A DNA stretch of 64,000 bases from Macrostomum lignano (taxonomy: Eukaryota), in the NCBI GenBank assembly GCA_002269645.1, contig NIVC01002298.1, forward strand, positions 1 to 64,000, read 5' to 3'. Positions within the stretch are counted from its first letter, which is position 1. Each line of letters starts with the position of its first letter. Both the position numbers and the translations under genes were made by a program. Below the pieces are notes generated by a model. That model searched no databases. It saw only the letters and a list, made by a program, of their open reading frames with translations, and was not told where the DNA came from. Below are positions 26,967 to 51,059 of the stretch, piece after piece.

Positions 26967-27090
26967 ATGTCTTCGGGTCAGGATGACGGCTCCGGCTGCC
27001 CCGGACACGACGAGGGCAACTGCCATCTGGACGACTTCTTTGCTCAGGCCTTCAAGTCTTTCGAGGCGGAGGCGAACGCGACGGCCTCAG
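26967..27090 (+). CDS. DOCK-like gene, putative exon 1
   Basis: ATG 26967, g|gtatgg donor, phase 1 matches the next exon; no family motif in this exon. Confidence 0.55.
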
Positions 27091-27791: not shown

Positions 27792-27902
27792 TTTTAGTTA
27801 TTTAGTTAGTTAGTTATTTAGTTAGTTAGTTAGTTAGTTATTTAATTATTTAGTTATTTAGTTAGTTAGTTAGTTAGTTAGTTATTTTAGTTATTTAGTT
27901 AT

Positions 27903-27933
<31 letters not shown>

Positions 27934-28207
27934 TTTTAGTTATTTAGTTAGTTAGTTATTTAGTTAGTTAGTTAGTTAGTTATTTAATTATTTAGTTATT
28001 TAGTTAGTTAGTTAGTTATTTAGTTATTTAGGTATTTAGTTATTTAGTTAGTTAGTTAGTTAGTTAGTTATTTAGTTAGTTAGTTAGTTATTTAGTTATT
28101 TAGTTATTTAGTTATTTAGTTAGTTATTTAGGTATTTAGTTATTTTGTTTGTTAGTTAGTTAGTTAGTTAGTTAGTTATTTTGTTAGTTAGTTAGTTATT
28201 TAGTTAT

Positions 28208-28246
<39 letters not shown>

Positions 28247-28247
28247 T

Positions 28248-28284
<37 letters not shown>

Positions 28285-28289
28285 GAGTG

Positions 28290-28338
<49 letters not shown>

Positions 28339-28370
28339 TTTAGTTAGTTATTTAGGTATTTAGTTATTTT

Positions 28371-28402
<32 letters not shown>

Positions 28403-28427
28403 TTTAGTTATTTAGGTATTTAGTTAT

Positions 28428-28474
<47 letters not shown>

Positions 28475-28475
28475 T

Positions 28476-28524
<49 letters not shown>

Positions 28525-28529
28525 GAGTG

Positions 28530-28590
<61 letters not shown>

Positions 28591-28630
28591 ATTAGTTAGT
28601 TAGTTAGTTAGTTAGTTAGTTGGTTGGTTT

Positions 28631-28676
<46 letters not shown>

Positions 28677-28932
28677 CAGTCAGTCAGTCAGTCAGGCAGT
28701 CAGGCAGTCAGTCAGTCAGGCAGTCAGTCAGTCAATCAGTCAGGCAGTCAGTCAGTCAGGCAGGCAGTCAGTCAGTCAGGCAGGCAGTCAGTCAGTCAGT
28801 TAGTCAGTCAGTCAGTCAGTCAGTCAGTTAGTCAGTCAGTCAGTCAGTCAGTTAGTCAGTCAGTCAGTCAGGCAGGCAGTCAGTCAGTCAGTTAGTCAGT
28901 CAGTCAGTCAGTCAGGCAGGCAGTCAGTCAGT
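27104..28932. repeat. Intron 1 compound microsatellite (TTAG/TTAT)n grading into (CAGT/CAGG)n
   Basis: Direct. Confidence 0.97.
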
Positions 28933-28956
28933 CCCTCACGCCCCCCCGTCACGCAG

Positions 28957-29215
28957 GTGCCGCATCACCCCAGTCCCCGCCGGGACCTGCAGGCGGGCCA
29001 GCCGTAGACGAGGAGCCGGCGGCCCTGCTGGTGAGGCTGGTGGGCCTGGACTGCCCCAACTGCCCGGACCCGCTGGAGCTCACACTGACGCTGTGCACCG
29101 AGTCCGCCACCGGCTGCAGCATTGAGTCCGAGTGGGAGCCGCTGACGCTGCTCTGCGACCCAGCCTTGGACCTGCAGCAGCAGCAGCAGCAGCTGGATGC
29201 ACCAGTTCTGTTTCG
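28957..29215 (+). CDS. DOCK-like exon 2
   Basis: cgcag acceptor, cg|gtgag donor, open frame ending PVLFR; phases consistent. Confidence 0.75.
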
Positions 29216-29331
29216 GTGAGTTTTTGAATCCTCCTAGCTCCAGGGGCGGGTCCAGGAAAAGACGCTTTGGTTCGGGGGACACCCACAAGGACTGCACTGC
29301 CAAAGACAAAGCTCTGCCTACTGGCTCTAAC

Positions 29332-29640
29332 CACAGATACCCCCAGACACCCTAGACACCCCAGACACCCTCCAGACACCCCCAGACACCACAGACACCT
29401 AAAAATCCTCCCAGACACCCCAGGCACTCTTCAGACACCCCAGACACCCAGACACCACAGACACCACAGACACCCCAGACACCCCCAGACACCACAGACA
29501 CCTAAAAATCCTCCCAGACACCCAGGCACTCTTCAGACACCCCAGACACCCAGACACCTCAGACACCCCACGCATCCTCCAGACACCCCTAGACACCCCA
29601 GACACCACATAAACACCAGACATCCCAGAAATTCCAGAAC
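29332..29640. repeat. Intron 2 degenerate cagacacc repeat
   Basis: Direct. Confidence 0.85.
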
Positions 29641-29772
29641 CTCGGACAGCGTCAAAAAGGAGACACCGCAAATACGGGCAATTAGTGCAGCAGTGTACAT
29701 GTATCAAATGAGCCCACAGTGCTTGAACCCTTTTCAAAAGGCGCGCCACACCCACCCCATCCTCTCCCGCAG

Positions 29773-30334
29773 CGAGGTAGGCGGGTCGCTGGCCGCCACC
29801 TCATCGATGCACATCCGCATGGACCGCCGCGGCCGCCTCCCCAGCCCGCGCCTCAGCCTGGGCGGTGCGCTTCGAGGCGGCGGTGGCGGCGGTGGCGTCA
29901 ACGGAGGCGCCGGCAGCGGCAGCTTCGTGCTGCGCCCGTTCGGCCAGGGCTTCGCCGATGTCGGCCGGGCTGCCACCGCAGGCGAGGTGCTCAGCGTGCG
30001 GATCGGCCTGATTGGAGACACCGGCGACAGCGGCGGCAGCGGCGGCAACACTGTAGGAGGCTCGGTCAGCAGCCGGATGTCCCGGGCGGCGTCCGTAGCT
30101 TTCGACTCGCCGCAGCGACCGTCCGCAGCGGGCTCGGTGCTCGGCCAGCTGAAGCTGCACGCCCGGATTGTCGTCGGAGCCGCCGCCATCGCCGCCGCCG
30201 CCAACTCGGCGCTGCTGGCGTCCCGGCCGACCAGCCAGCGCGGCCTCGGGCGGGCCGACCGCGATGAAGCCTACCTGTGGCTGCAGCGCGGCGAGTTCGG
30301 GATCAAGGATCCCAATGTGGAGATCAAAGCTCAG
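29773..30334 (+). CDS. DOCK-like exon 3 (start of DHR-1/C2)
   Basis: LRPFGQGFADV (cf. DOCK1-5 RRPFGVAVMD) and LWLQRGEFGIKDPNVEIKAQ. Confidence 0.85.
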
Positions 30335-30554
30335 GTGAGCTGAAGCTGACTTTTCTGTGCGATCCGCTGACCTTGCTGCATGCTGCATCAGTCCTGCTAA
30401 AAAGCCTCTGAAAAGACTGCAGGGGACTCCGGGCATCCCGGATACAGCTGGGGTGGCGATGACCTCCCATTCCTCTGGTGCTGCGGTGTCGCGCAGGGAG
30501 ATCCGGTGGCGCCGGTGTCCGCAGCGCCCCCCCCCTTCTGGAGTGTCCAGGAGG

Positions 30555-30795
30555 TGGATTTTTTATTAGAGTCAAGGAGCTGTATTCACTCTGGCGCACT
30601 TTAAGCGACATTGTCACACAACCGGCGAGAGGCATTACTGCCAATTCCGCCGACTCGCCTGAGCAGGCACACAAGCGCGCGGATACGTACGCAGTCATAC
30701 GCACAGGCACACACTCACACAGGAGTGTACAGCGGCCCTAACTTTATTTATCATTAGGCATGTACACTTCACTGCGCCTTGGGGGTTGGCCCTCG
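30555..30795 (-). mobile_element. 5'-truncated copy of the 25725 SINE
   Basis: Reverse complement matches ~25840-26070, including the ctctaataaaaaa tail. Confidence 0.9.
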
Positions 30796-30809
30796 TAGGA
30801 ACTACTGTG

Positions 30810-31160
30810 GTCAGCTGATCTGTCTGGCATTTCAGGGTTTCTGTGAAAGCCGTCCAGTCAGTGTTCCAGACGTTCTTTTTCCACAGGATGTTAGGCTTGG
30901 GGCAAGAGGATTGCAACCGGAAACGAACGAAGCGGTGGTCAGACAGACTCCTCTTTGTCCCACACCTCCCAGTCCTTGACCAGAGTGAGACGAGGGTTAC
31001 ATCGAGGGCCTCCGTCCATCGCCCGTTGTCGAAGGTGGGGGTTCCACCAATGTTGCAAAACTCAGCACTAGTGATGCAGATGTAAGCAAGGAGTTCCTCG
31101 CCTCTGCTGTTGGAGGTATTACTGCCCCAGTGGATGTGTTGGGCATCGAGGCAGTGATGA
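30810..31160 (-). mobile_element. LOA LINE APE fragment directly fused to the SINE body
   Basis: HWGSNTSNSRGEELLAYI...TPTFDNGRW...LDVTLVS...SLSDHRF; closely similar to 24630-24970. Confidence 0.88.
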
Positions 31161-31189
31161 TTGTGCGGTTGTTGATAATAGATACCTTC

Positions 31190-32045
31190 CTGCACCCTCC
31201 AACACCTTCCAATACCCTCCAGTGTCCTCCATACCCTCCAACACCTCCAATACCCTCCAGTGTCCTCCATACCCTCCAACACCCTCCAATACCCTCCAGT
31301 GTCCTCCATACCCTCCAACACCCTCCAATACCCTCCAGTGTCCTCCATACCCTCCAACACCCTCCAATACCCTCCAGTGTCCTCCATACCCTCCAACACC
31401 CTCCAATACCCTCCAGTGTCCTCCATACCCTCCAACACCCTCCAATACCCTCCAATACCCTCTAATACCCTCCAACACCCTCCAATACCTCCAATACCCT
31501 CCAACACCCTCCAATACCCTCCAGTGTCCTCCATACCCTCCAACACCCTCCAATACCCTCCAGTGTCCTCCATACCCTCCAACACCCTCCAATACCCTCC
31601 AGTGTCCTCCATACCCTCCAACACCCTCCAATACCCTCCAGTGTCCTCCATACCCTCCAACACCCTCCAATACCCTCCAGTGTCCTCCATACCCTCCAAC
31701 ACCCTCCAATACCCTCCAATACCCTCTAATACCCTCCAACACCCTCCAATACCTCCAATACCCTCCAACACCCTCCAATACCCTCCAGTGTCCTCCATAC
31801 CCTCCAACACCCTCCAATACCCTCCAGTGTCCTCCATACCCTCCAACACCCTCCAATACCCTCCAGTGTCCTCCATACCCTCCAACACCCTCCAATACCC
31901 TCCAGTGTCCTCCATACCCTCCAACACCCTCCAATACCCTCCAATACCCTCTAATACCCTCCAACACCCTCCAATACCTCCAATACCCTCCAATTCCCTC
32001 CAATACCCTCCAATACCCTCCAATACCCTCCAATACCCTTCAATA
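31190..32045. repeat. Intron 3 39-bp minisatellite built of ataccctcca-like subunits, with higher-order blocks
   Basis: Direct. Confidence 0.95.
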
Positions 32046-32077
32046 CGCTCCAAAACCCTCCGTCCCGCCCTCCACAG

Positions 32078-32956
32078 GTGGTGGACTCCGCCGGCTCGCC
32101 TGTGCCCGCAGCTCTGGCCAATCTGGAAGCCGCCCTGAGCGGCCGCGGCGGCCCCCGGCCAGGTGAGCAGCAGTTCCGCAGCCGGGTGCTGCACCACCAG
32201 GCCAGGCCGGTGTGGAATCAGATCGTCCGCCTCGACCTCAGCCGCCTGCTGCTCAACGCTGAGTACCAGGTGGCTCTGGAGGCCTGGCACCGCTCCAGCA
32301 TGTCGCAGCGCGGCGAACGTCGCCTCGGCTTCGCCCGCCTGCCGCTGGTGGCCGTGGAGCGCGGCGTGGCCTGCCTCAGTCCGGCCGGCAGCCGCATCGT
32401 CGTCTTCCACGACTCGGAGGACGCCGCCGTCGCGGCCGTCGCGGCCACTTCGCCGACTTCCACGGACAGCCGGTCGAATTTGAGCAGCCTGGACGACAGG
32501 GCGAGCAGCGGTGAAGCCGGAGATGCAGTCGATGGCCGGGCGAGGCGGCCGGTCAGCAACCGAATCACCGTCATTCTGGACTTCTGCACCGGCCGCCGAT
32601 CCACCAGCTGGCGCCTGGCCAGCCTCCTGCTGCCGCTGCCTCATCAGCGCTCGCCGCACAGACCGGCGGAGCTCCGGCTGGACACGGAGGATCAGCGCGA
32701 CCTGCTGGCGTGCTTCCACCGCCTGCTGGCCAGCCTGCTGCCGCGCCTGTGCGCCCAGGAGTCCAGCGTCAGCGACCCCGCCTTCGCCAGCCTCGTCCGC
32801 CTGCTGGCTCTGGCGGCCAAGCAGCCGCAGCAGGAGGCCGCCAGGATTGCCGCCTGCGTGGCGGAGACGCAGATGCCCGTCGGGCTGCACCGGGTGCTGC
32901 TGCGGCAGCTCGCCACCGAGGTGCACCGCGACTTCCGTCTGGCCACGGGGTCTCAG
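32078..32956 (+). CDS. DOCK-like exon 4 (DHR-1 core)
   Basis: QFRSRVLHHQARPVWNQIVRLDL, AWHRSS, LGFARLPL; cag/gtgag sites, phase 0. Confidence 0.88.
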
Positions 32957-33019
32957 GTGAGCGGCATCAGGTGATCCGGATCCCTAAATACGGATTCTAA
33001 GTCTTAGCTATCTAACCCA

Positions 33020-33635
33020 GTCCCCACCTACAGATCCTAATCCACATCTACAGATCCCAATCCTCATCTACAGATCCCAACCCCCATCTACAGATCCCAA
33101 TCCCCATCTACAGATCCCAATTCCCATCTACAGATCCCAATTCCCATCTAAAGATCCCAATTCCCATCTACAGATCCCAATTCCCATCTACAGATCCCAA
33201 TCTCCATCTACAGATCTCAATCCACATCTGCAGATCCCAATCCTCATCTACAGATCCCAATCCCCATCTACAGATCCCAATCCCCATCTACAGATCCCAA
33301 TTCCCATCTACAGATCCCAATTCCCATCTACAGATCCCAATTCCCATCTACAGATCCCAATTCCCATCTAAAGATCCCAATTCCCATCTACAGATCCCAA
33401 TTCCCATCTACAGATCCCAATCCTCATCTACAGATCCCAATCCCCATCTACAGATCCCAATCCCCATCTACAGATCCCAATTCCCATCTACAGATCCCAA
33501 TTCCCATCTACAGATCCCAATCTCCATCTACAGATCTCAATCCACATCTGCAGATCCCAATCCACATCTACAGATCCCAATCTCCATCTACAGATCTCAA
33601 TCCACATCTGCAGATCCCAATCCCCATCTACAAAT
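33020..33635. repeat. Intron 4 20-bp minisatellite (cagatcccaattcccatcta)
   Basis: Direct. Confidence 0.95.
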
Positions 33636-33781
33636 GTTCACATCCCACCCAAAAGCCCAAATCGCATCCCAGAGAAATAGATTTCACACCCTAATCCCAG
33701 ATATCCCAATCCAAACCCCACAGATCCCAGATCACAATCTCATAGACTCTCATGTACATCTCAACTCCCCTGTCGCCGCAG

Positions 33782-34201
33782 GCGGTGATGCGCGACCTGT
33801 ACGACAGCGTGCGGCCCATCCTGCGCCTGGTGGCCGCGTCCGCCAGTCGCGAGGGCCAGCAGCGCTCCGAGGTGGTGCAGCCGGAGTTCGAATTCCTGTT
33901 CCGCGCATTACGCGAGCACCCGATCCGCCCGGACAACGAGCTGCAGTGCAAATTCGCCTCCATGCTGGTCACGGACTGCCTGCCGCTGCTGGTGGCCGCG
34001 GCGGAGCCCCGCTGGCTGTGGCAGCAGCTGCGGCGGCTGCTGACGGACCTTCGGGCAGGTCAGAACGGCCGCCTGCCGCTGGGGCTGCTGCGGTTCACCC
34101 ACCTGGTGGAGATCGACGAGTTCTGGCAGTGGCCGGACACCCGGCTGCAGCTGGCCGAGGCCGCGGCTGACCACGCCATCGAGGTCCTGATCGCGCAGAA
34201 G
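33782..34201 (+). CDS. DOCK-like exon 5 (armadillo-type region)
   Basis: Acceptor at 33781; 140 open codons; the donor gtcaag is weak, so the end is tentative. Confidence 0.75.
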
Positions 34202-34359
34202 GTCAAGATTGAGGAACAGGCGAGTTGCGCGCTTGCTTTGGGGATTTTTCGGGAAAAGGGAGATGGGATGAAATGACCTGCTGCTGTTGTGGGACATGTG
34301 GATAAAATGCGGATGGGATATTCTAGAGAATGACGATCACATTAAGCGTGAAATATTTT

Positions 34360-34940
34360 CTCAAATCCCATCCTCAAATCCAATCCTCAAACCCCAATTC
34401 CCCATCCTCAAATCCCATCCTCAAATCCCATCCTCGAATCCCATCCTCAAATCCCATCCTCGAATCCCATTTTCAAATCCCATCCTCAAATCTCATCTTC
34501 AAATCCCATCCTCAAATCCCATCCTCAAATTCCATCCTTAAATCCTATCCTCAAATCCCATCCTCAAATCCCATCCTCGAATCCCATCCTCGAATCCCAT
34601 CCTCAAATCCCATCCTCGAGTCCCATTTTCAAATCCCATCCTCAAATCCCATCCTCAAATCCCATCCTCGAATCCCATTTTCAAATCCCATCCTCGAGTC
34701 CCATTTTCAAATCCCATCCTCAAATCCCATCCTCAAATCCCATCCTCAAATCCCATTTTCAAATCCCATCCTCAAATCCCATTCTCAAATCCCATCCTCA
34801 AATCCCATTTTCAAATCCCATCCTCAAATCCCATCCTCGAATCCCATTTTCAAATCCCATCCTCAAATCCCAAGATCAAATCCCATCCTCAAATCCCATT
34901 CTCATCACATTTTCAAACCCCATCCTCGAATCCCACCCTG
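34360..34940. repeat. Intron 5 13-bp minisatellite (caaatcccatcct)
   Basis: Direct. Confidence 0.95.
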
Positions 34941-35030
34941 AAATCTCAAATATTTTGGATTGCATTGACATTTCCAACAAAGGTGGGATGAACAAAGATG
35001 ATATTAAACCCCCCTCTCCAACACCCGCAG

Positions 35031-35321
35031 GTGCGGCCGGGCAACCTGGGCATGCTGGAGTCCACCATCCGGCCGCTGAATGAGCTGCTCCGTCGTCTGG
35101 GTCTTCTGGACGCCGCGACCGTAGAGCCGGAGGTGCGGCTGCTGGCTAGTCGCCGCCTCCTGCGGCCGCTGCTGCAGGTGTGCGCGCTGGTCGCCTTCGA
35201 CCGGCCCGTGGCGAACATGCGGCTGCCCCAGAAACCGCAGGAGCCCAAGTACCTCCGCTGGATCCTCACCAGCATCGTGTCCTTGATGGAGCTGTTCAAC
35301 CGCTCTGAGGGCGCTTGGCAT
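35031..35321 (+). CDS. DOCK-like exon 6
   Basis: cgcag acceptor, gtgagt donor, phase 0/0, 97 codons. Confidence 0.8.
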
Positions 35322-35397
35322 GTGAGTCTGAAGTCCCCTGAGAGTCTCTTCAATTCCTATCAGGTGTCTTAGATTATTAAATCCCCAGGACTCTTTA

Positions 35398-35870
35398 AAC
35401 CATCCTCAAATCCCATCCTCAAATCCTATCCTCAAATCCCATCCTCAAATCCCATCCTCAAATCCCATCCTCAAATCCCATCCTCAAATCCCATCCTCAA
35501 ATCCCATTCTCAAATCCCATTCTCAAATCCCATCCTCAAATCCCATTCTCAAATCCCATTCTCAAATCCCATTCTCAAATCCCATTCTCAAATCCCATTC
35601 TCAAATCCCATCCTCAAATCCCATCCTCAAATCCCATCCTCAAATCCTATCCTCAAGTCCCATTCTCAAATCCCATCCTCAAATCCCATCCTCAAATCCC
35701 ATTCTCAAATCCCATTCTCAAATCCCATCCTCAAATCCCATTCTCAAATCCCATTCTCAAATCCCATTCTCAAATCCCATTCTCAAATCCCATCCTCAAA
35801 TCCTATTCTCAAATCCCATCCTCAAATCCCATCCTCAAATCCCAAGATCAAATCCCATCCTCAAATCCCA
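35398..35870. repeat. Intron 6 13-bp minisatellite, same unit as intron 5
   Basis: Direct. Confidence 0.95.
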
Positions 35871-35883
35871 CCCGGATCCGCAG

Positions 35884-36453
35884 GCCTGGCTGGAGGCAGC
35901 CGACGGAGCCTCAGCGGACGCGGCCGCAGCGGCCTGCGCAAGCTGGTCGCCGGTGTTGGGCCTGGAGGTCTGGCCCTCTCTGCCCGCGGCCCGCACCGAC
36001 TTGGTTGATGAGGCGGCGGAGATGCTGCAGTTTCTGTCCGGCATTTTCGATCAGTACGGCGGCCGCTGGGGTGCCTGGAACGGCTTGCTGCTGCTCGAGT
36101 CCGCAGTTACCATGGAGACCATGCGCCGGCTGGCCGCGCTGCTCCCGCTGGAGTCGCTGCCGGGCCTGGCTGGCGCCGCCCTGTCCAGCCTCTTCAGCTT
36201 CATCCAGCAGCCGCAGGCGGTGGCCTCCATGGGCGAGCGGCGACGGCATCCGCGACTGGCGGCGCTGCCTCCCGACCTGCGCCAGCCGGCGCTCGAGACG
36301 GCGCGCTCAATTTGGGCGCGGCTGTCGGCGCCGACGCGCGCAGATTTGGCGCCGAGCCTGGTGCCGAGGCTGCTGCGCTGCGCGGCTGCGGCGAGGCCAA
36401 ATCAGCTGGAGCTGCTGAGCGAGGCGGTGGGCATGCTGGCCGACCTGCTGCAG
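35884..36453 (+). CDS. DOCK-like exon 7
   Basis: DLRQPALETARSIWARL...LVPRLL...MLADLL (cf. DOCK GDMR...W..L..FIP..V..L...FFDMM); phase 0/0. Confidence 0.82.
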
Positions 36454-36489
36454 GTATGGGGCGTGTATGGCCTCAGCTGTAAGAGAGCC

Positions 36490-37690
36490 CCTACAATCTC
36501 ACACATGCAATCTCACCCCTACAATCTCACACATGCAATCTCACCCCTACAATCTCACACATACAATCTCACCCCTACAATCTCACCCATATAATCTCAC
36601 CCCTACAATCTCACCCTTACAATCTCACCCCTACAATCTCACCCCTACAATCTCACCCATACAATCTCACCCATACAATCTCACCCCTAAAATCTCACAC
36701 CTACAATCTCACACCTACAATCTCACCCCTACAATCTCACCCATACAATCTCACACCTACAATCTCATACCTACAATCTCACACCTACAATCTCACCCCT
36801 ACAATCTCACATCTACAATCTCACCCTTACAATCTCACCCCTACAATCTCATCCCTAGAAACTCACCCATACAATCTCACACCTACAAACTCACACCTAT
36901 AATCTCACCCCTAAAATCTCACACCTAAAATCTCACACCTACAATCTCACCCCTACAATCTCACCCATACAATCTCACACCTACAAACTCACACCTATAA
37001 TCTCACCCCTACAATCTCACACCTACAATCTCACCCCTATAATCTCACCCCTACAATCTCACCCCTAAAATCTCACACCTACAATCTCACACCTACAATC
37101 TCACCTCTACAATCTCACATCTACAATCTCACCCTTACAATCTCACCCCTACAATCCCATCCCTAGAATCTCACCCCTACAATCTCACACCTACAATCTC
37201 ATACCTACAATCTCACACCTACAATCTCACCCTTACAATCTCACCCCTACAATCTCATCCCTAGAAACTCACCCATACAATCTCACACCTACAAACTCAC
37301 ACCTATAATCTCACCCCTAAAATCTCACACCTAAAATCTCACACCTACAATCTCACCCCTACAATCTCACCCATACAATCTCACACCTACAAACTCACAC
37401 CTATAATCTCACCCCTACAATCTCACACCTACAATCTCACCCCTATAATCTCACCCCTACAATCTCACCCCTAAAATCTCACACCTACAATCTCACACCT
37501 ACAATCTCACCTCTACAATCTCACATCTACAATCTCACCCTTACAATCTCACCCCTACAATCCCATCCCTAGAATCTCACCCCTACAATCTCACACCTAC
37601 AAACTCACCCCTACAATCTCACCCCTACAATCTCACCCCTTTAATCTCACCCCTAAAATCTCACCCCTACAATCTCACCCCTATAATCTT
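36490..37690. repeat. Intron 7 14-bp minisatellite (tacaatctcacccc)
   Basis: Direct. Confidence 0.95.
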
Positions 37691-37705
37691 AAAAACCACC
37701 CACAG

Positions 37706-38200
37706 ATCCCGGACTCCGCCCACGCCAGCGCCACCCAGCTCACCCTGGCGCTGGACAAGCTGATGGAAGAGCAGCGCGCGGACGAGGGCTTCAGCGCCAG
37801 GTTCCGGCGCCAGCTCGCCGAAGCGCTGGACGAGGCCAACGGCGCCCCAGGCAGCCAGCTGGTGTCCGCGGTGAGCGAGCAGCTCAACCTGCTGCGGGAG
37901 AGCGCGCGGAGGCCTTCCGGTAGCGCCGGCAGCGCTGCTGAGCTGGCCGACGACCCGCAGGCGCTGGCGCTGCACCGGCTGCAGCGGTTCTACCAGGAGG
38001 CTGGGCTGCATCAGCTGGCCTGGCGCTGCTGCCTGCGCCTCTGGCAGCTCCAGCAGCGGGCGGGTCGCCTGATCGAGGCCGCCTGCTGCCTGGCGTCCGT
38101 GGCGCGGAGCCTGGATTGGAGCGACGAGGCGCCACCCGGGGGCGACGGCTTCAAATTGCCGGTGGAGCTGCGGGACTGCACGACTCAGGCACAGCTCAAG
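37706..38200 (+). CDS. DOCK-like exon 8 (start of DHR-2)
   Basis: RCCLRLWQLQQRAGRLIEAACCL...LDWSD...QAQLK (cf. RYL.KL..LH...NY.EAA..L...L.WSD...QLKE). Confidence 0.85.
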
Positions 38201-38202
38201 GT

Positions 38203-38877
38203 AGCAGAGTAGCTGAGTAGCTGAGAAACTGAGTAGCTGAGTAGCTGAGTAACTGAGTAGCTGAGTAACTAAGTAGCAGAGTAGCTGAGTAACTGAGTAG
38301 CTGAGTAACTGAGTAACTGAGTAACTGAGTAGCTGAGTAACTGAGTAGCTGAGTAACTGAGTAACTGAGTAGCAGAGTAGCTGAGTAGCTGAGTAACTGA
38401 GTAGCTGAGTAACCGAGTAGCTGAGTAACCGAGTAGCTGAGTAACTTAGTAGCTGAGTAGCTGAGTAACCGAGTAGCCGAGTAACCGCGTAGCTGAGTAA
38501 CTTAGTAGCTGAGTAACTGAGCAACTGAGTAGCTGAGTAACTGAGTAGCTGAGTAGCTGAATAGCTGAGTAGCTGAGTAGCTGAGTAGCTGAGTAGCTGA
38601 GTAGCTGAGTAGCTGAGTAACTTAGTAGCTGAGTAACTGAGTAGCTGAGTAACTGAGCAGCTGAGTAACTGAGTAGCTGAGTAACTGAGTAGCTGAGTAA
38701 CTGAGTAGCTGAGTAACTGAGTAGCTGAGTAACTGAGTAGCTGAGTAACTGAGTAGCTGAGTAGCTGAGTAAATTAGTAGCTGAGTAACTGAGTAGCTGA
38801 GTAACTAAGTAACTGAGTAGCTAAGTAACTTAGTAGCTGAGTAACTGAGTAGCTGAGTAGCTGAGTCATAACTAACC

Positions 38878-38926
<49 letters not shown>

Positions 38927-38987
38927 GCTAACTAACTAACTGACTAACTAACTAACTAGCTAACTGACTGACTAACTAACTAACTAG

Positions 38988-39046
<59 letters not shown>

Positions 39047-39095
39047 GCTAACTGACTGACTAACTAACTAACTAACTGACTAACTAACTAACTAG

Positions 39096-39134
<39 letters not shown>

Positions 39135-39175
39135 GCTAACTAACTAGCTAACTGACTGACTAACTAACTAACTAG

Positions 39176-39221
<46 letters not shown>

Positions 39222-39250
39222 GACTAACTAACTAACTAGCTAACTGACTG

Positions 39251-39290
<40 letters not shown>

Positions 39291-39339
39291 GCTAACTAAC
39301 TAACTAGCTAACTAACTGACTGACTAACTAACTAACTAG

Positions 39340-39393
<54 letters not shown>

Positions 39394-39447
39394 GACTAAC
39401 TAACTAACTAGCTAACTGACTGACTAACTAACTAACTAGCTAACTAT

Positions 39448-39497
<50 letters not shown>

Positions 39498-39543
39498 GAC
39501 TAACTAACTAACTAGCTAACTAACTGACTAACTAGCTAACTAG

Positions 39544-39618
<75 letters not shown>

Positions 39619-39643
39619 GCTAACTGACTGACTAACTAACTAG

Positions 39644-39710
<67 letters not shown>

Positions 39711-39711
39711 G

Positions 39712-39749
<38 letters not shown>

Positions 39750-39807
39750 GACTAACTAACTAACTAGCTAACTGACTGACTAACTAACTAACTAACTAAC
39801 TAACTAG

Positions 39808-39842
<35 letters not shown>

Positions 39843-39874
39843 GCTAACTAACTAACTAGCTAACTAACTGACTG

Positions 39875-39913
<39 letters not shown>

Positions 39914-39915
39914 CA
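38203..39915. repeat. Intron 8 compound repeat: (ctgagtag/ctgagtaa)n to ~38866, then (TAAC)n
   Basis: Direct. Confidence 0.97.
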
Positions 39916-39954
39916 CTCACTTAAAAAACTAAACATCTCTCCCCAAAACCGCAG

Positions 39955-41270
39955 GAGCGCCTCCTCCAGACGGCCAGCGAGAGATTTCGCGCCGGCGGCC
40001 TCCCGCTGAAGGCCAAGCAGCTGACGGAAGAGCTGTGGCTGCACCTGAAGGACCGGTTGCTGGAGTTCAAGCGGGAGCGAGCGGTGCTGCTGCGCCTGTC
40101 GGGCCTGTGCCAGGAGCTGCAGAGCCCAAATCTGTCGGACTGGCGCTGCCCCGCGCCGGCCTACTACCTGGCGGCGCTCCGCAGTGGCGCCGAGGCCGAG
40201 CTGCCAGCCGGTTTGCGCAGAGCAGCCGGCGCCACAGACGCGCCGCGTCACTTCGTCTGCGCCTTCCCGGACGGTGCGTCGATTGAGGAGGCGGCGGCGC
40301 GGCTCGAGCGCCTCCTGCATGGCGCCATCGTGCTGCCCGCCGCGCTGGCCGGCGCTGAAGACGCCTTTAGCGAAGATCTGGACGAGTCGGACGGCGAGGA
40401 CGAAGAAATCTTTGAAGACCCGGATGCTGCGGACACGCAAAGCTGCGACTCGCCCGCCCTGCGCATCCGCCTGTACCCACTGACCCCGGTGCCCGAACCG
40501 CCCATGCCCGGCCTGGTCGGCGGCGGCAGCGGCTTCGGCGGCTTCTCAGCGCTGTCCGCCATGCGCCATCACCGGTACAATGACGTCCGACGATTTCAGC
40601 GCTTCGACGCGCCGCGAAGAAGACGCCAGCGGCACCGCCTGCTGAGACTCTACGAGACCGAGGAGCCGCTGCCCGCCCCGTGCGCCTCCTGCCCGCCCGC
40701 CTGCTGGAGACCCGCCGCCAGGGCCCGCTGGAGGTCGCCACCGCCAGCGCCGAGGCCACCGTCTGGCAGCTGCGCTGTGCCGCGCGCCAAATCGCCGAAG
40801 CCGCGCCAGCCGACCCGGAGGAGGCCGCCGAGGACTGGCGCCAGGTTGCAGAGCTGTCACGCCGCTCTGTGGCGGAAGTCGACGCCGCCCTCGCTGAGCT
40901 CCGAGCCGCCGAGCTCGTCAATGATGCCGACGAGGCCGCTGACGGCGGAGACGCCGGGGCGGGCAGCTCCGGCCATCGAAGTCGCCTTCTGGGCGAAGCG
41001 CGACAGCTTTTTGAGCAGGCAACCCGCTGCCTGGAGCTGCTGTACCATCGCCGACCTCCGGGCATCGGCACTGGCGGCAGTAATGAAGAAGTCGTGGACA
41101 TCTCTCGCCAGCTGCTCCAGCGGCTGTGCAGCTTCAGGGACTTCAGAGATGTCACTGTGGCGGGCTCTGCGGCCACCGCCTCCTGCCGCGACCGCCTGGA
41201 ACTGCTGGAGTCGGGCTCCGGGCCGCCGATCGTGTCCCGCAATTTCTGCAAGCGGCCGAGCCTCCTCTGA
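39955..41270 (+). CDS. DOCK-like exon 9 (DHR-2 lobes B/C, stop); one -1 frameshift at ~40676-40680
   Basis: PAYYLAAL, RHFV, GPLEVA (cf. SPLENA), LSRRSVAEVDAALAEL (cf. LSM.LNG.IDAAVNGG). One extra C in gccccgtg joins ORFs 40057 and 40680. Confidence 0.82.
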
Positions 41271-41297: not shown

Positions 41298-41800
41298 ACC
41301 TGACTCTCCGCCTCCTGACTCACCGTCTCCTGACTCACCGGTCTCCCGACTCTCCGTCTCCTGACTCTCCGTCTCCTGACTCTCCGTCTCCTGACTCTCC
41401 GTCTCCTGACTCTCCTCCTCCTGACTCTCCGTCTCCTGACTCTCCGTCTCCTGACTCTCCGTCTCCTGACTCTCCGCCTCCTGACTCTCCGCCTCCTGAC
41501 TCTCCGCCTCCTGACTCTCCGTCTCCTGACTCTCCGTCTCCTGACTCTCCGCCTCCTGACTCTCCGTCTCCTGACTCTCCGTCTCCTGACTCTCCGTCTC
41601 CTGACTCTCCGTCTCCTGACTCACCGGTCTCCTGACTCACCGGTCTCCTGACTCTCCGTCTCCTGACTCTCCGTCTCCTGACTCTCCGTCTCCTGACTCT
41701 CCGTCTCCTGACTATCCACCACCTGACTCTCCGTCTCCTGACTCTCCGTCTCCTGACTCTCCGTCTCCTGACTCTCCGTCTCGTCTCCTGACTCTCCGAC
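41298..41800. repeat. 15-bp minisatellite (ctgactctccgtctc) just 3' of the DOCK stop
   Basis: Direct. Confidence 0.95.
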
Positions 41801-43524: not shown

Positions 43525-44616
43525 TCAGTGGGCGTAGCCGTGCAGGAACGGGCAGCCCGCACCTTTGAAGCACTGCCCAGCAGCCCAGAACTTGCAGGTC
43601 ACTCTGCTCAGGTCGTGCGCGAACTCGCAGTCCTCCTTGCGGCAGCGGCCTTTGAGCAGGAATGAGCAAGCTCGCTTCGACTTGTCGAGGAGCTGCTGCG
43701 GCTGCGGCTGCTGCTGGGCCTCGGGCCTCGGCGGGCAGGGCTCCGGTCGCCACAGCAGCCAGCGGATCCGGTCCAGCGGGCCCCAGTAGTCCATGGCCTC
43801 CAGCACCGCCTCCTGCGGCATGCGGAACAACCCGGTGGCCAGGAAGGCCGACGGCTGCTTCTGCGGCTGCCGCGGATCCGCCGATGCCGCCGACGCTGAG
43901 CTTCCTGACGAGGACGCCTCGTTGTCGGCGTAGTCTCCGTCCTCCTCCTCCTCCAGACTGTCGGTGGAGTCAAAAAAGTACATCACCGGCGGGGACTCGC
44001 CGCGGTCCGCGGCCTCCCAGAACGCCTCGTCGTCATCATAGTCGGAGTCTTCGTCAGCTCCGTCCGTCGGCACGCGGAAGCTGGTAGCCAGAGCCGAGGC
44101 GCTGAGCAGCCCGAGGACTTCAGCCGACTCGCTCGCCTCCTCCGCTGCTCCGGCCGACTCCGCCTGCACCTCCAGGTTGAAGGCGAGCAGCAGCTGGTCC
44201 ACCATCTGCAGGATCTCGGAGCCGTCGCTGGAGGCCGAGCTCTCCAGGTCGTCATCGTCGTACGGTCCAGGCCGGTCCAGCGGCGCCAACGGCAGCGGGC
44301 GAGTCTCCGCGGCGGCGCCCTCCAGGAAGCCCTCATCAGAGGGGATGACGGAGACCTCGGCGTAGCGACCGCCTCCGCCGAAGTCGCCGAGGTGGGTGAA
44401 GCCGCCGCCAGCGAATCCAGAGCAGCCGAAGCCCCCGCCGCCGTTGCCGCCACCGGCCCACCAGCCGCCGCCGCCGAAGTCTTCCACCGGCGAGTTGGAC
44501 ATCGCTGAGTCCCAGGAGTCGGCGGCGGCTGCGGCCGCGTTGAGGAAGGCAGCCGCCTGAGCAACTTTCCGGCAGCTGAGCTGCTCTGAAAATTCTGTCC
44601 CGGCGCTCAAATCCAT
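43525..44616 (-). CDS. Tandem CCCH zinc-finger protein with long acidic/Gly-rich low-complexity N-terminus, single coding exon
   Basis: CSFLLKGRCRKEDCEFAH and CKFWAAGQCFKGAGCPFLH. A possible 5'UTR intron runs 45062-44671 (cag|gtaagt ... tttttattag). Confidence 0.85.
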   Translation of the reverse strand: MDLSAGTEFSEQLSCRKVAQAAAFLNAAAAAADSWDSAMSNSPVEDFGGGGWWAGGGNGGGGFGCSGFAGGGFTHLGDFGGGGRYAEVSVIPSDEGFLEGAAAETRPLPLAPLDRPGPYDDDDLESSASSDGSEILQMVDQLLLAFNLEVQAESAGAAEEASESAEVLGLLSASALATSFRVPTDGADEDSDYDDDEAFWEAADRGESPPVMYFFDSTDSLEEEEDGDYADNEASSSGSSASAASADPRQPQKQPSAFLATGLFRMPQEAVLEAMDYWGPLDRIRWLLWRPEPCPPRPEAQQQPQPQQLLDKSKRACSFLLKGRCRKEDCEFAHDLSRVTCKFWAAGQCFKGAGCPFLHGYAH

Positions 44617-45310
44617 GCCGCTGGCTGTGGCTCAGAGCTGATTAGTGAACTCAAGTCTGCCCGCACTCAGCTAATAAAAAAGCACGTTGATCAGTTTAAT
44701 TAGCCATGTTTTTATTATGCCTGAGGACGCCCACCCCACCTCCGCCAGGCTGATTTCGCCCGCCACCCCATCAGCGGCCCCAAGCCGTAGGTAAATCTCA
44801 ACCTGCTATTCACACCTCTAAGGTGAGTTGTCTAACATCAGGTGGGGGGGTCAGCGCTTAATTATCGACCGTCTGGTTGAGAAATCAGAGGTAGGTGTCC
44901 CCCTGCCGAGAGGAGCCCCCTGCCGAGGGTTGATCTGGGTTTTTGGCCCAATTGTCGGCCACCTTTGATGTACCTGGCTTTTCACGTGTCTCGTAGGCGC
45001 AATTATTGATTCTCTTCCCGTGTGCACGTAATTAATTCCGATCGATAAATCAATTAACTTACCTGAGCGCCGGGCTGAGGTCTGTGTACGGTTGGCCCAA
45101 AACAATACGGTAATTACTGGCTGCATCTTACTGCTTTAAGTAGCCTATTACGAGTTGCAGTGTGTGAGAATCCGCCTGCCCAACTTGCCTGCCTTAAACC
45201 GCATTTAATCAATACAAATCAAATTCATCTGGCGATCTGGCGGCTTTGTGCGCAAAAATTGGTCGTAGGAATTCACAGCCGTGAAGGCCAACCCTCAAGA
45301 CACAGAGTGT

Positions 45311-47615: not shown

Positions 47616-47712
47616 GAGCCCGCCGGGGCCGCCCCTCAGCCTCCCAGATTTTTCATTGCCTTAGAAAAATCCAACTAAACTTCTTATCAGAATTCCTTAC
47701 AATCTCCGGAGA

Positions 47713-48459
47713 ATGTCTTCCCAATGGTCATGGACCGGCATCCCTGAGCAGCAGCAGCAGCAGGGGTTCCATAACCAACAGGACGGTCTCTACCAGTGGC
47801 CCTCCGCTACCGACTTTCCCGTTGACGTCCTCGACCAGCTGCCGTTGATGCAGCCGCCTCCAGCGCCAGAGAAGCGTCAGAGAAAGCGCCGACAGCAGCC
47901 GCAGCCGCAGCAGCAGCAGCAAAAGCAACAGAAAAAGCAGCAGCGAAAGCAACAGCAGACAAATCCGCAGCAGAAGCAGCAGGCGGGCCTGAGCCAGGTC
48001 GAGCGCCAGGCGGCCAACCAGCGCGAGCGGGAGAGGATGCACGTACTGTCCAGGGAGTACCACCGGCTCAAGCTCGCCCTGCCCAACATCCCGCCCGACA
48101 CGAAGCTGTCCAAGCTGGACACCCTGCGGCTGGCGGCTCGGTACATCCGGCATCTGACCGAACTGCTCCGGCAGGATGACGACGGCGCAGACAGCAGCGG
48201 CTTCCAAGCCGACGATGAGGCGGTTGAGAACGCTGAGAATTTGAAGCCTGCGCTTGAGCAGCAGCAGGTGGTGCCCTGGAGCTTCGCCAGAACCGCCGAT
48301 CATCACGGTGGTCGAAGGCTCGCAGCGGCCGCGCCAGCCCCGGCACCGACAAGCCGAGGAGGAGGAGGCCGCCGAAGTGACGGCAGCTCCAGCAGCGCGG
48401 CGGACGCATCTGGCCTGAGCTGCGGCTGCTGCGAGCTGTCCGGCCAGTGCTTCGACTGA
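47713..48459 (+). CDS. bHLH transcription factor, MyoR/TCF21 (musculin/capsulin)-like, poly-Q
   Basis: [51 protein letters not shown]; the downstream VVPWSF resembles the TCF21/MSC TWPF motif. Confidence 0.9.
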
Positions 48460-49935: not shown

Positions 49936-50384
49936 AGACAAGAGACTAGCGAGAGGAGAGTAACCAAGCCAATGATTTTACCCAGCAAAATTGTGTTTGG
50001 TACACAGATTAAAATAAACGAAGTAATTAATAGGCGTTGGGCTCCGTGAATTGGGCCAGTGATGGGCAGAAATAATTTTTTCACGCACCCGCTGCCGCAA
50101 GGTGGCTTCAATCGCCTCTCGGGCGTGACGCAGTGGCCCCCTCGTTATGCCGCGAGTTCGAAAGGCGGGCAGCTGCGGGCTTCCCCGCTGCGGTCGTGGG
50201 CGAAACTCCCAGCGGGTGCTTTAAGAGGAGGGGCTCCCGACCCCCTCAGAACTGGCGGATATTGGGGACTGGGGTTGATCTCTGCGCAGCCCCGTATGTC
50301 CGTCTTGGAACTGCTGGGTGGCTTTTCTGTCTGTCTGGTACAGTCTCTGTCTCAGCGTATGTGTCTGTTGTACTGTATTTCTGT

Positions 50385-50627
<243 letters not shown>

Positions 50628-51059
50628 CGCTGTGTCCTGTGTGCATCCGCAGGCCGCAGCAAACTAACCTTCAAGTACGATTTCCCTTTTATCTCTGGTC
50701 AATTACCATCGCTCCACCTGCTCCCCGCCGCCAGCCCTTCAGCCTCAAGAATCACAAGTCTTTAATGACGCAAATCTCCTCTATCTGAAGCCTCGCCAAT
50801 ATCGAAATTGAAATTGCGGGCCTATAAATCATCCGGGCAGGCAGCTGGAGCTGGAGAGCAGGTGGTGGCGGCTCAGAAATGCTGATAATGCATTTGGCCC
50901 GGTTCTGCTTTAGTAAAGCTGGCGACGATTTGCTGGGATGAAGCATTCTCTGTCAGCGAATGCATTACTGTTCTGTGTGTGTGCGAACTGATGGGAGCGC
51001 TGAATTACAGTGCTGATAGGGAAGATGACAGCCAGCAAGATTATTTATGTTAGGGGATA

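What the first reader, a model, noticed from the sequence alone, without database searches (positions are those of the whole stretch)
40854..40901. DOCK-family protein with the catalytic nucleotide-sensor motif replaced: candidate pseudo-GEF
Seen: LSRRSVAEVDAALAEL aligns without gaps to the DOCK1-5 DHR-2 motif LSM.LNG.(V/I)DAAVNGG. DAA is kept, but the invariant Val and NGG read L-A-E-L. Established: that Val in the alpha10 loop displaces Mg2+ and is required for Rac/Cdc42 exchange. The gene otherwise keeps 9 in-phase exons with DHR-1 and DHR-2, and no N-terminal SH3 is visible. Inference: a maintained, catalytically dead DOCK acting as scaffold, Rac trap or dominant negative.
Basis: partly seen in the sequence, partly recalled or inferred. 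Interest (0 to 1): 0.75.

Follow-up and report, generated by a model that had tools for sequence, protein, structure and literature searches.

The report
Flatworm DOCK paralog lacking its catalytic loop
The peptide lies in the tail of a highly diverged, shortened copy of a DOCK-type Rac/Cdc42 activator gene in the flatworm Macrostomum lignano; the catalytic loop cannot be found in it, so it is either a non-catalytic DOCK relative or a decaying duplicate, and the data here cannot say which.

Summary
The peptide LSRRSVAEVDAALAEL is at 40854-40901 (+). It lies inside a 1,316-bp terminal exon (39955-41270), not in a separate 40676-40901 exon. The gene has nine GT-AG exons (26967-41270) and encodes about 1,638 aa. 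It belongs to Macrostomum lignano.

- **Family:** it is a divergent paralog of a more canonical M. lignano DOCK-A/B protein (PAA54466.1), which keeps SH3, DOCK-C2, TPR, DHR-2 and the sensor "ATVGGG".
- **What is recognisable:** DHR-1, the solenoid, DHR-2 lobes A and B and the first lobe C helix (hhalign 99.3%; Foldseek top hits DOCK5/DOCK2).
- **What is not:** homology stops just before helix alpha10.
- **Sensor:** no V-x-G-G motif exists in the protein or in any frame of the window. AlphaFold gives a continuous helix there.
- **N-terminus:** no SH3 or N-terminal exons were found upstream.

The core idea, a DOCK without a recognisable nucleotide sensor, holds. The specific "Val to Leu, DAA kept" reading does not.

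"Maintained" is unproven. The frame has 0 stops in 1,638 codons, against about 25 in the other frames. However, a 1-nt frame change at 40679/80 sits just upstream of lobe C, and sister copies are frame-jumbled. Expression and dN/dS could not be tested.

The parts
26967..27090 (+). Exon 1. It starts at the first ATG of its ORF (MSSGQDD...) and ends in phase 1.
   Evidence: The junction ASG|AASPQ is reproduced in the M. lignano model P0005.
28957..29215 (+). Exon 2. This is where homology to paralog P0007 (from its aa 229) begins.
   Evidence: The junction VLFR|EVGG is reproduced in P0005.
29773..30334 (+). Exon 3. It ends with the start of the DOCK-type C2 (…AYLWLQRGEFGIKDPNVEIKAQ).
30263..32359 (+). 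DHR-1 / DOCK-C2 match (aa 292-409), spanning intron 3.
   Evidence: Pfam PF14429, E 1.4e-7, 32.1 bits against a cut-off of 33.6. It aligns to the C2 of P0007, which scores 78.5 bits.
32078..32956 (+). Exon 4: the rest of the C2 and the start of the helical solenoid.
   Evidence: tblastn with P0007, E 6e-17.
33782..34201 (+). Exon 5 (solenoid). Alternative in-phase donors exist at 34183 and 34219.
   Evidence: P0005 reads AIEVLIAQK|VRPGNLG, which matches the donor at 34201.
35031..35321 (+). Exon 6 (solenoid).
   Evidence: tblastn with P0007, 44% identity, E 3e-13.
35884..36453 (+). Exon 7 (solenoid).
37706..38200 (+). Exon 8: the first part of DHR-2 lobe A, including the ...RLIEAACCL... helix.
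39955..41270 (+). Exon 9, the terminal exon. It holds the end of lobe A, lobe B and lobe C, and ends with the stop TGA at 41268-41270. The finding lies inside it.
   Evidence: The junction AQLK|ERLL is reproduced in P0001 and P0002. This is the only intron position shared exactly with the paralog.
40672..40680 (+). Site where the reading frame changes by one base (frame 0 to frame 2), in ctgcccgCCCCgtg. It lies 58 codons upstream of the peptide and 13 codons before lobe C.
   Evidence: P0002 reads straight through (LPAPVRLLPARL), while P0001 shares the shift. Downstream, frame 2 keeps the coding GC pattern .78/.55/.80.
40126..40718 (+). DHR-2 lobe B (aa 1258-1455). It carries an acidic insert and a Gly-rich low-complexity insert.
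   Evidence: hhalign aligns it to the DOCK-A/B profile. AF2 gives beta strands with two low-confidence inserts. Identity to P0007 is 24%.
40719..41153 (+). DHR-2 lobe C equivalent (aa 1456-1600): four predicted helices. Only the first (GPLEVATASAEATVWQL...) is alignable to DOCKs.
40815..40940 (+). The alpha10-equivalent helix (aa 1488-1529), predicted as one unbroken 42-residue helix with no Gly or Pro. It contains the reported peptide.
   Evidence: AF2 helix 449-490 of the fragment, pLDDT about 61-70. In the control paralog the helix breaks right after VGGG.
40854..40901 (+). The reported peptide LSRRSVAEVDAALAEL (aa 1501-1516).
   Evidence: Its motif score is not above chance.

Best explanation
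The peptide is part of the second helix of DHR-2 lobe C in a lineage-specific, fast-evolving paralog of the DOCK-A/B (CED-5/DOCK180-type) exchange factors of Macrostomum lignano.

Compared with its more canonical sister gene (PAA54466.1), the protein differs as follows:
- It has lost the N-terminal SH3 and about 230 residues of the ELMO-binding region.
- It keeps the DOCK C2 (DHR-1), the helical solenoid and DHR-2 lobe A, the dimerisation lobe.
- Lobe B is weakened, and everything from helix alpha10 onward has diverged beyond recognition.
- The helix-breaking V-x-G-G insert, which in all characterised DOCKs pushes a valine into the GTPase Mg2+ site, is absent. The helix is predicted to run through unbroken.

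Inference: if the protein is made, it cannot catalyse exchange by the canonical DOCK mechanism. It would then act non-catalytically. The most plausible route is through the parts that are still conserved: C2/solenoid interactions, and homo- or heterodimerisation through lobe A with the canonical paralog. Trapping Rac is less plausible.

Shown here: gene structure, family, domain content, absence of the motif, and an open reading frame. Inferred: loss of GEF activity, the scaffold or dimer-partner role, and current expression.
For: Organism and family:
- All close hits are M. lignano proteins.
- phmmer against paralog P0007 gives 362 bits over model aa 76-1257, then only 7 bits for aa 1398-1478.
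- P0007 carries SH3 (by its sequence, ALYNY motif, and its UniProt name 'SH3 domain-containing protein'), and Pfam DOCK_N (weak), DOCK-C2, TPR_DOCK and DHR-2 lobe A and a weak, sub-threshold lobe C match (20.7 bits). Its sensor GIVCATVGGGIDNF is intact.
- The next hits are CED-5/DOCK1 orthologs at E about 1e-6.

DHR-2 membership:
- hhalign of the single sequence against an 8-sequence DOCK-A/B DHR-2 profile gives 99.3%, E 1.8e-20. It covers lobes A and B and the first lobe C helix, and stops at aa 1482.
- The AF2 model (pLDDT 68, pTM 0.67) hits DOCK5 (7dpa_A, E 1.8e-13; 9lx0_B, TMq 0.62) and DOCK2 DHR-2 (TMt about 0.7).

Sensor absent:
- The lobe C HMM scores -1.2 bits.
- The motif profile finds nothing above shuffles in the protein. 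The best hit in any of the six frames of the window is 18.6, whereas real motifs score 52-72.
- Identity in the alpha10 segment is 10-14% to homologs, against 24-38% among real DOCKs.
- AF2 predicts a continuous helix, whereas the paralog control breaks after VGGG.

No SH3.

Frame kept open: 0 stops in 1,638 codons, against 25-26 in the other sense frames and about 29 in shuffles. All eight introns are GT-AG.

Background: the sensor Val is described as invariant across DOCKs 'in all species' and essential for exchange (PMC10152721).
Against: - A one-base frame change at 40679/80 lies just upstream of lobe C. If it is real, the peptide is not translated at all.
- Other M. lignano copies of this gene (P0002, P0003, P0004, P0006) are riddled with frame jumps. 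Models of the canonical paralog from the same assembly are clean.
- The amino-acid composition has drifted strongly towards GC-rich codons: A+L+R = 38%, K 1.0%, Y 0.7%, and GC1/GC2 .75/.52 against .64/.41 in the paralog at equal GC3. This looks like relaxed protein-level constraint.
- No transcript-based (PAA) protein for this gene turned up, although the searches were not exhaustive for that.
- No ortholog outside M. lignano was found, so conservation of the sensor-less state cannot be shown.
- One alignment retains a Val (V1509) at the sensor column.
- AF2 confidence in lobe C is only about 60-70, and the MSA contained canonical DOCKs, which biases the fold match.
Confidence: 0.45

Rival explanations
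1. Decaying duplicate. The locus belongs to a small family of near-identical copies of an old DOCK paralog that is now being lost in the partly polyploid M. lignano genome. On this reading the frame change at 40679/80 is real, lobe C is no longer translated, and the 'replaced motif' is simply neutral drift in a dying C-terminus.
For: - The frame change sits immediately upstream of lobe C and is shared by P0001.
- Sister copies are 43-76% identical to the window's protein, with 13-48 gap openings caused by frame jumps. Models of the canonical paralog from the same source are 96-97% identical with 3-5 gaps.
- Lobe C has the lowest GC3 (0.76, against 0.82-0.91 elsewhere).
- There is a GC-driven amino-acid drift.
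- No transcript-based protein for the gene was seen.
- The DV1 line carries extra chromosome copies and 180 Mb of duplicated blocks at 95% identity or more (PMC5730564).
Against: - The frame has 0 stops in 1,638 codons, where about 25-29 are expected, and all 16 splice sites are intact.
- The frame downstream of the shift keeps the coding GC periodicity and ends at a proper stop.
- The shift lies in a C-run, the classic position of a long-read consensus error, and one copy (P0002) reads through it.
- Both public assemblies reuse the same PacBio reads, so the shared shift is not independent evidence.
- GC-rich, repeat-flanked exons may simply be polished worse than those of the paralog.
- At 33% identity to the paralog and with almost no shared intron positions, the gene survived as an ORF for a long time after duplication.
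Confidence: 0.3
2. Still an active but very divergent GEF. On this reading an aliphatic residue of the helix (V1506, V1509 or L1513) substitutes for the sensor valine, and the protein activates a Rho-family GTPase of M. lignano without ELMO.
For: - The overall DHR-2 fold is retained, with all three lobes predicted.
- One MAFFT alignment puts V1509 in the invariant Val column.
- The paralog P0007 is itself divergent (lobe C only 20.7 bits in Pfam), so the lineage evolves fast.
- The open reading frame through lobes B and C is intact.
Against: - No Gly or Pro occurs anywhere in the 42-residue helix, so the seven-residue alpha10 insert that presents the valine cannot be modelled.
- The paralog keeps VGGG and shows the break.
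- The most conserved segment of all DOCK DHR-2 domains (PMC10152721) is here at random-level identity.
- The GTPase-contacting lobes are the least conserved parts of the protein.
Confidence: 0.15
3. Artefact of assembly or gene modelling. On this reading the true gene has a normal sensor that is hidden by indels, a missed exon or a wrong frame.
For: - The window has at least one frame inconsistency.
- The public M. lignano models of this gene are chaotic and mis-named.
Against: - A scan of all six frames of the whole 64-kb window with the alpha10 profile finds nothing (maximum 18.6, against 52-72 for real motifs).
- tblastn with lobe C of P0007 and P0008 finds no extra exon.
- P0001 has the identical peptide and C-terminus.
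- Frame 2 is the coding frame by GC periodicity.
Confidence: 0.05

Closest known systems
M. lignano PAA54466.1 / BOX15_Mlig008420g2 (P0007), an SH3-containing DOCK-A/B-type protein of 1,814 aa
   Same: - It is the closest relative: 362 bits and about 31-32% identity across the pre-C2 region, C2, solenoid and lobe A.
- Both genes have 9 exons, with every intron filled by a tandem array.
- GC3 is the same (about .87).
   Different: - P0007 keeps SH3, a DOCK_N remnant and the sensor ATVGGG. Pfam recognises its lobe A (31 bits) and gives a weak, sub-threshold lobe C match (20.7 bits, cut-off 26).
- The window gene lacks the first ~228 residues of P0007, has no recognisable alpha10 to alpha12, and has inserts in lobe B.
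- It shares only 1 of 8 intron positions exactly.
DOCK-A subfamily: DOCK1/DOCK180, DOCK2, DOCK5, CED-5, Myoblast city
   Same: - Same architecture: C2 (DHR-1), then the TPR/ARM solenoid, then DHR-2 with lobes A, B and C.
- The best structural matches are DOCK5 and DOCK2.
- The best non-Macrostomum sequence hits are DOCK1/CED-5 orthologs.
   Different: - No SH3 or ELMO-binding N-terminus.
- Pfam DHR-2 models do not fire at all.
- The nucleotide-sensor valine loop, reported as invariant in all species (PMC10152721), is not present.
Pseudoenzymes among signalling proteins (pseudokinases and similar); no DOCK-family pseudo-GEF was found in the literature search
   Same: The fold of an enzyme family is retained while the catalytic signature is missing, and the reading frame is kept open.
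   Different: Maintenance by selection, expression and lack of activity are not demonstrated here. A search for pseudoGEF or pseudo-GEF together with DOCK or DHR2 returned no DOCK paper that uses the term.

Membership tests
DOCK family (CZH/DOCK180-related GEFs) | DHR-1: a DOCK-type C2 domain upstream of DHR-2 | tested here: met
   Pfam PF14429, E 1.4e-7, 32.1 bits over aa 292-409. This is 1.5 bits under the curated cut-off. The same region aligns to the C2 of P0007, which scores 78.5 bits. UniProt names the near-identical P0005 a 'C2 DOCK-type domain-containing protein'.
DOCK family (CZH/DOCK180-related GEFs) | DHR-2 domain with lobes A, B and C at the C-terminus | tested here: met
   hhalign gives 99.3%, E 1.8e-20, covering lobes A and B and the first helix of lobe C. 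All 19 Foldseek hits at E<=1e-3 are DOCK DHR-2 structures. No Pfam DHR-2 model fires, and the last three lobe C helices are placed only by order and predicted structure.
DOCK family (CZH/DOCK180-related GEFs) | Invariant nucleotide-sensor Val on the alpha10 insert (V-x-G-G type loop) | tested here: not met
   No motif is found in the protein or in the six frames of the window. The lobe C HMM scores -1.2 bits. hhalign stops before alpha10. AF2 gives an unbroken helix, whereas the paralog control breaks. Caveat: one of four alignments puts V1509 in the Val column.
DOCK family (CZH/DOCK180-related GEFs) | Rac/Cdc42 nucleotide-exchange activity | not testable with these tools
   This needs a mant-GDP or similar assay with the recombinant DHR-2 and M. 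lignano Rho GTPases.
DOCK-A/B subfamily (DOCK1-5) | N-terminal SH3 domain | tested here: not met
   There is no SH3 hit in the 1,638-aa model. tblastn with P0007 aa 1-229 and with P0008 finds nothing upstream in the window. Exon 1 starts at the first ATG after an in-frame stop. An exon beyond the window or a trans-spliced 5' end cannot be excluded.
DOCK-A/B subfamily (DOCK1-5) | DOCK_N / ELMO-binding helical region | tested here: inconclusive
   Pfam DOCK_N does not fire. Model aa 76-~200 does align to P0007 aa 229-350, which lies inside P0007's weak DOCK_N match at aa 87-348. This is a C-terminal remnant only.
DOCK-A/B subfamily (DOCK1-5) | Closest sequence and structure relatives are DOCK-A/B rather than DOCK-C/D | tested here: met
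   Relatives in order: P0007, then cuttlefish DOCK1 and nematode CED-5. In Foldseek, DOCK5 and DOCK2 rank ahead of DOCK10, 9, 8 and 7.
Pseudoenzyme (pseudo-GEF) | Homolog of an enzyme family that lacks the catalytic signature | tested here: met
   See the rows above.
Pseudoenzyme (pseudo-GEF) | Maintained by purifying selection and expressed | tested here: inconclusive
   For: 0 stops in 1,638 codons against 25-29 expected, and intact splice sites. Against: the frame change at 40679/80, jumbled sister copies and compositional drift. dN/dS and RNA-seq were not available.

The most novel reading that the evidence does not exclude
This would be a naturally occurring DOCK-family pseudo-GEF. It would be a selectively maintained, ELMO-independent, sensor-less DOCK-A/B paralog. 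It would keep the C2, the solenoid and the lobe A dimer interface. It would modulate Rac signalling by heterodimerising with, or competing against, the canonical M. lignano DOCK. That would be an exception to the rule that the sensor valine is invariant in every DOCK of every species.
Probability: 0.25. Interest if true: 0.65.

Novelty: new variant of a known kind. Interest (0 to 1): 0.42.

Why it matters
DOCK exchange factors are described as using one invariant valine-bearing loop in all species (PMC10152721). No catalytically dead family member turned up in the literature search here.

A maintained DOCK that keeps its membrane-targeting, solenoid and dimerisation parts but has lost the catalytic loop and the ELMO-binding end would show that DOCK scaffolds can have exchange-independent roles. 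It would also provide a natural 'GEF-dead' allele in a transgenic, RNAi-amenable regeneration model.

If it is instead a decaying duplicate, it is an ordinary by-product of the redundant M. lignano genome. It then mainly serves as a warning about the quality of the public gene models for this locus.

Tried and rejected
1. Separate exon at 40676-40901: rejected. There are no splice signals, the ORF is continuous to 41270, and P0001's in-frame 'fix' needs a 14-nt intron.
2. A short real intron to explain the frame change: none with plausible GT-AG and length was found by reading the sequence.
3. Pfam on single exons and on the full model: only a sub-threshold DOCK-C2 hit, no DHR-2.
4. phmmer against PDB sequences: only low-complexity Gly-run noise.
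5. A custom lobe C HMM: no signal.
6. An intact motif in another frame or in an unannotated exon: none found.
7. Orthologs outside M. lignano: none found in an exhaustive HMMER scan of 1.84 billion representatives.
8. Genomic DNA of the sister copies for dN/dS: P0002 is not on record, and the other copies are UniRef-only.
9. Word-index protein searches. One timed out. The others missed known relatives such as P0005 and P0006. They therefore cannot be used to argue that a transcript-based annotation is absent.
10. The DOCK-B, C or D alternatives: not supported by hit order.
11. The N-terminal 480 aa of P0005 as real exons: rejected. They come from reverse-transcriptase/endonuclease-like ORFs upstream, so the model is chimeric.
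Full report
**What is at the coordinates**

window:40854-40901 (+) translates to LSRRSVAEVDAALAEL. The opposite strand has a stop there.

The window is eukaryotic. It has GC-rich exons separated by introns that are almost wholly tandem repeats.

All close protein hits are from the flatworm Macrostomum lignano. P0005 (UniRef A0A1I8I3H5, 'C2 DOCK-type domain-containing protein') is 96-98% identical to the protein encoded here.

**Gene model**

Reading the boundaries gives nine plus-strand exons, all with GT-AG introns:

| Exon | Coordinates |
|---|---|
| 1 | 26967-27090 |
| 2 | 28957-29215 |
| 3 | 29773-30334 |
| 4 | 32078-32956 |
| 5 | 33782-34201 |
| 6 | 35031-35321 |
| 7 | 35884-36453 |
| 8 | 37706-38200 |
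| 9 | 39955-41270 |

The junctions are reproduced in the public M. lignano models P0001, P0002, P0005 and P0006. The product is about 1,638 aa, and the reported peptide is aa 1501-1516.

The peptide lies in the 1,316-bp terminal exon.

- One sister copy (P0002) reads straight through as LPAPVRLLPARL. I restored the frame the same way.
- Another copy (P0001) shares the shift and bridges it with an impossible 14-nt 'intron'.
- Downstream of the shift, the frame containing the peptide has the same GC periodicity as the rest of the gene (.78/.55/.80 against .76/.51/.83). It ends at a proper stop.
- Both public assemblies were built from the same PacBio reads (PMC5730564). The shared shift is therefore not independent evidence, and a homopolymer under-call is a realistic explanation. 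I cannot decide this here.

**What family it is**

- Pfam on the whole model finds only DOCK-C2 (E 1.4e-7, 32.1 bits, cut-off 33.6) and no DHR-2 model.
- A sequence search of the PDB finds nothing.
- An exhaustive HMMER scan of 1.84 billion representative proteins finds the M. lignano copies, then one bridging protein, P0007 (E 8.5e-83), then DOCK1/CED-5 orthologs at E about 1e-6.

P0007 is M. lignano PAA54466.1. It has an N-terminal SH3 by its sequence (ALYNY motif) and by its UniProt name 'SH3 domain-containing protein'. Pfam finds a weak DOCK_N match, DOCK-C2 (78.5 bits), TPR_DOCK, DHR-2 lobe A and a weak, sub-threshold lobe C match (20.7 bits). Its sensor, GIVCATVGGGIDNF, is intact.

The window's protein aligns to P0007 with 362 bits over aa 76-1257, which covers the pre-C2 region, C2, solenoid and lobe A. 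After that it aligns with only 7 bits over aa 1398-1478.

A profile-profile comparison of the single DHR-2 sequence with eight DOCK-A/B DHR-2 domains gives 99.3% probability (E 1.8e-20). It covers lobes A and B and the first helix of lobe C, and it stops at aa 1482, immediately before helix alpha10.

An AlphaFold2 model of aa 1040-1638 (pLDDT 68, pTM 0.67) finds DOCK5 and DOCK2 first, then DOCK10, 9, 8 and 7. The MSA contained canonical DOCKs, so this match is not fully independent.

**The motif itself**

Other modes give different answers:
- the sensor Val opposite D1510;
- the sensor Val opposite V1509, that is, Val kept and GG changed to AA;
- the whole segment deleted.

Further tests agree that no alignment is supported:
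- I built an ungapped profile of the alpha10 segment from eight homologs. In 37% of shuffled lobe C sequences the best window scores at least as high as the best real lobe C window, which is a different register at aa 1517.
- A lobe C HMM scores -1.2 bits.
- Identity to homologs in the alpha10 segment is 10-14%, against 24-38% among real DOCKs, P0007 included.

The specific reading 'DAA kept, Val to Leu, NGG to AEL' is therefore not supported.

The broader point is supported. No V-x-G-G-type sensor is present at the expected place, anywhere in the protein, or in any of the six frames of the 64-kb window. tblastn finds no missed exon.

By order of predicted helices, the peptide lies in the alpha10 equivalent. 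AlphaFold draws this as a single unbroken 42-residue helix with no Gly or Pro. With the same alignment, the paralog control shows a break right after VGGG. Both predictions have only moderate confidence there.

**N-terminus**

No SH3 or DOCK_N is found in the model. No exon matching the first 229 residues of P0007 is found upstream.

The long N-terminal extension of P0005 comes from retroelement-like ORFs and is a chimeric prediction.

**Maintained or decaying?**

For maintenance:
- The coding frame has 0 stops in 1,638 codons, against 25-26 in the other sense frames and about 29 in shuffles.
- All splice sites are canonical.
- The duplication is old. Identity to P0007 is 33%, and only one of eight intron positions is shared exactly.

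For decay or relaxed constraint:
- The frame change lies just upstream of lobe C.
- The sister copies (P0002, P0003, P0004, P0006) are 43-76% identical to this protein, with 13-48 gap openings from frame jumps. Models of the canonical paralog from the same source are 96-97% identical with 3-5 gaps.
- Lobe C has the lowest GC3.
- The amino-acid composition is pushed towards GC-rich codons: A+L+R = 38%, K 1.0%, Y 0.7%, and GC1/GC2 .75/.52 against .64/.41 in the paralog at equal GC3.

Expression could not be tested, and no DNA of other copies or species was available for dN/dS.

**Most likely mechanism**

The conserved parts are the C2, the solenoid and lobe A. Established DOCK structural work identifies lobe A as the dimerisation lobe (PMC10152721, PMC3458822).

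The two lobes that touch the GTPase are the least conserved, and the ELMO-binding end is gone.

If the protein is made, an exchange-independent role through those conserved parts is the best guess. Candidates are membrane or partner binding, and homo- or heterodimerisation with the canonical paralog.

| Explanation | Weight |
|---|---|
| Sensor-less non-catalytic DOCK paralog | 0.45 |
| Decaying duplicate | 0.30 |
| Still-active divergent GEF | 0.15 |
| Artefact | 0.05 |

**Comparison with what is known, and novelty**

[quoted passage not shown] A search for pseudo-GEF together with DOCK or DHR2 found no use of the term in any DOCK paper. No paper links Macrostomum with DOCK proteins beyond a passing mention.

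The locus is a new variant of a known kind. It is moderately interesting if it proves to be expressed and constrained, and ordinary if it is a dying duplicate.

Noticed in passing
window 27091-39954 (all eight introns) and 41299-41782; L001 10880-19174: Every intron of this gene consists mostly of one or two tandem arrays with unrelated units (periods 4, 9, 39, 20, 13, 13, 14, and 16 plus 4), and a 15-bp array follows the stop codon. In intron 8 the array starts at the donor GT itself. The paralog's eight introns are each filled by a different tandem array as well (periods 16-42). I did not check whether this is a general property of the genome.
   Followed up: partly
window exon junctions compared with L001 10001-19771: Both paralogs have nine exons, but only one intron position is shared exactly (model aa 1200 = P0007 aa 1346, phase 0). 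One more is 4 residues off (aa 315 against 463). The other six differ by 20-50 residues. This points to extensive intron turnover or sliding since the duplication.
   Followed up: partly
P0001-P0006 (UniRef M. lignano entries matching this gene): The public models of this gene family are frame-jumbled. They also carry misleading UniRef names, such as PI3K/PI4K domain-containing, Separase, and serine/threonine protein kinase. Models of the canonical paralog from the same source are clean. P0005 is a chimera that runs through retroelement ORFs and an unrelated stretch of about 740 aa (P0005 residues 1343-2080) between the exon 6 and exon 7 matches.
   Followed up: partly
window 40280-40520 (aa ~1310-1390, lobe B): Lobe B carries two low-complexity inserts that are absent from other DOCKs. 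One is acidic (AEDAFSEDLDESDGEDEEIFEDPDAAD) and one is Gly-rich (MPGLVGGGSGFGGF). Both have very low AlphaFold confidence.
   Followed up: no
whole coding sequence 26967-41270: The amino-acid composition is extreme: Ala 14.3%, Leu 14.2%, Arg 10.0%, Lys 1.0%, Tyr 0.7%. It is driven by GC at codon positions 1 and 2 (.75/.52, against .64/.41 in the paralog), while GC3 is the same in both genes (about .86-.87).
   Followed up: partly
window 1108-3914 (+), and roughly 21260-24700 (+): Retroelement ORFs: reverse transcriptase (RVT_1, E 2e-28) followed by RNase H (E 2e-11). Further transposon-like ORFs lie upstream of the DOCK gene and were pulled into P0005.
   Followed up: partly
window 4667-5500 (+), 7210-7848 (+), 43528-44631 (-), 47665-48456 (+), 62505-63218 (+): The neighbouring ORFs carry TRAF/MATH domains (two pieces), CCCH zinc fingers, a bHLH domain (E 3e-15) and ankyrin repeats. 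No gene models were built for them.
   Followed up: no
window 13071-14483, 50224-50700, 59147-59700: Long, nearly perfect short-period tandem arrays lie outside genes. Examples are a roughly 1.4-kb array read as PAARQ repeats, and GACA- or ATCT-type arrays. They give long spurious ORFs in all frames.
   Followed up: no
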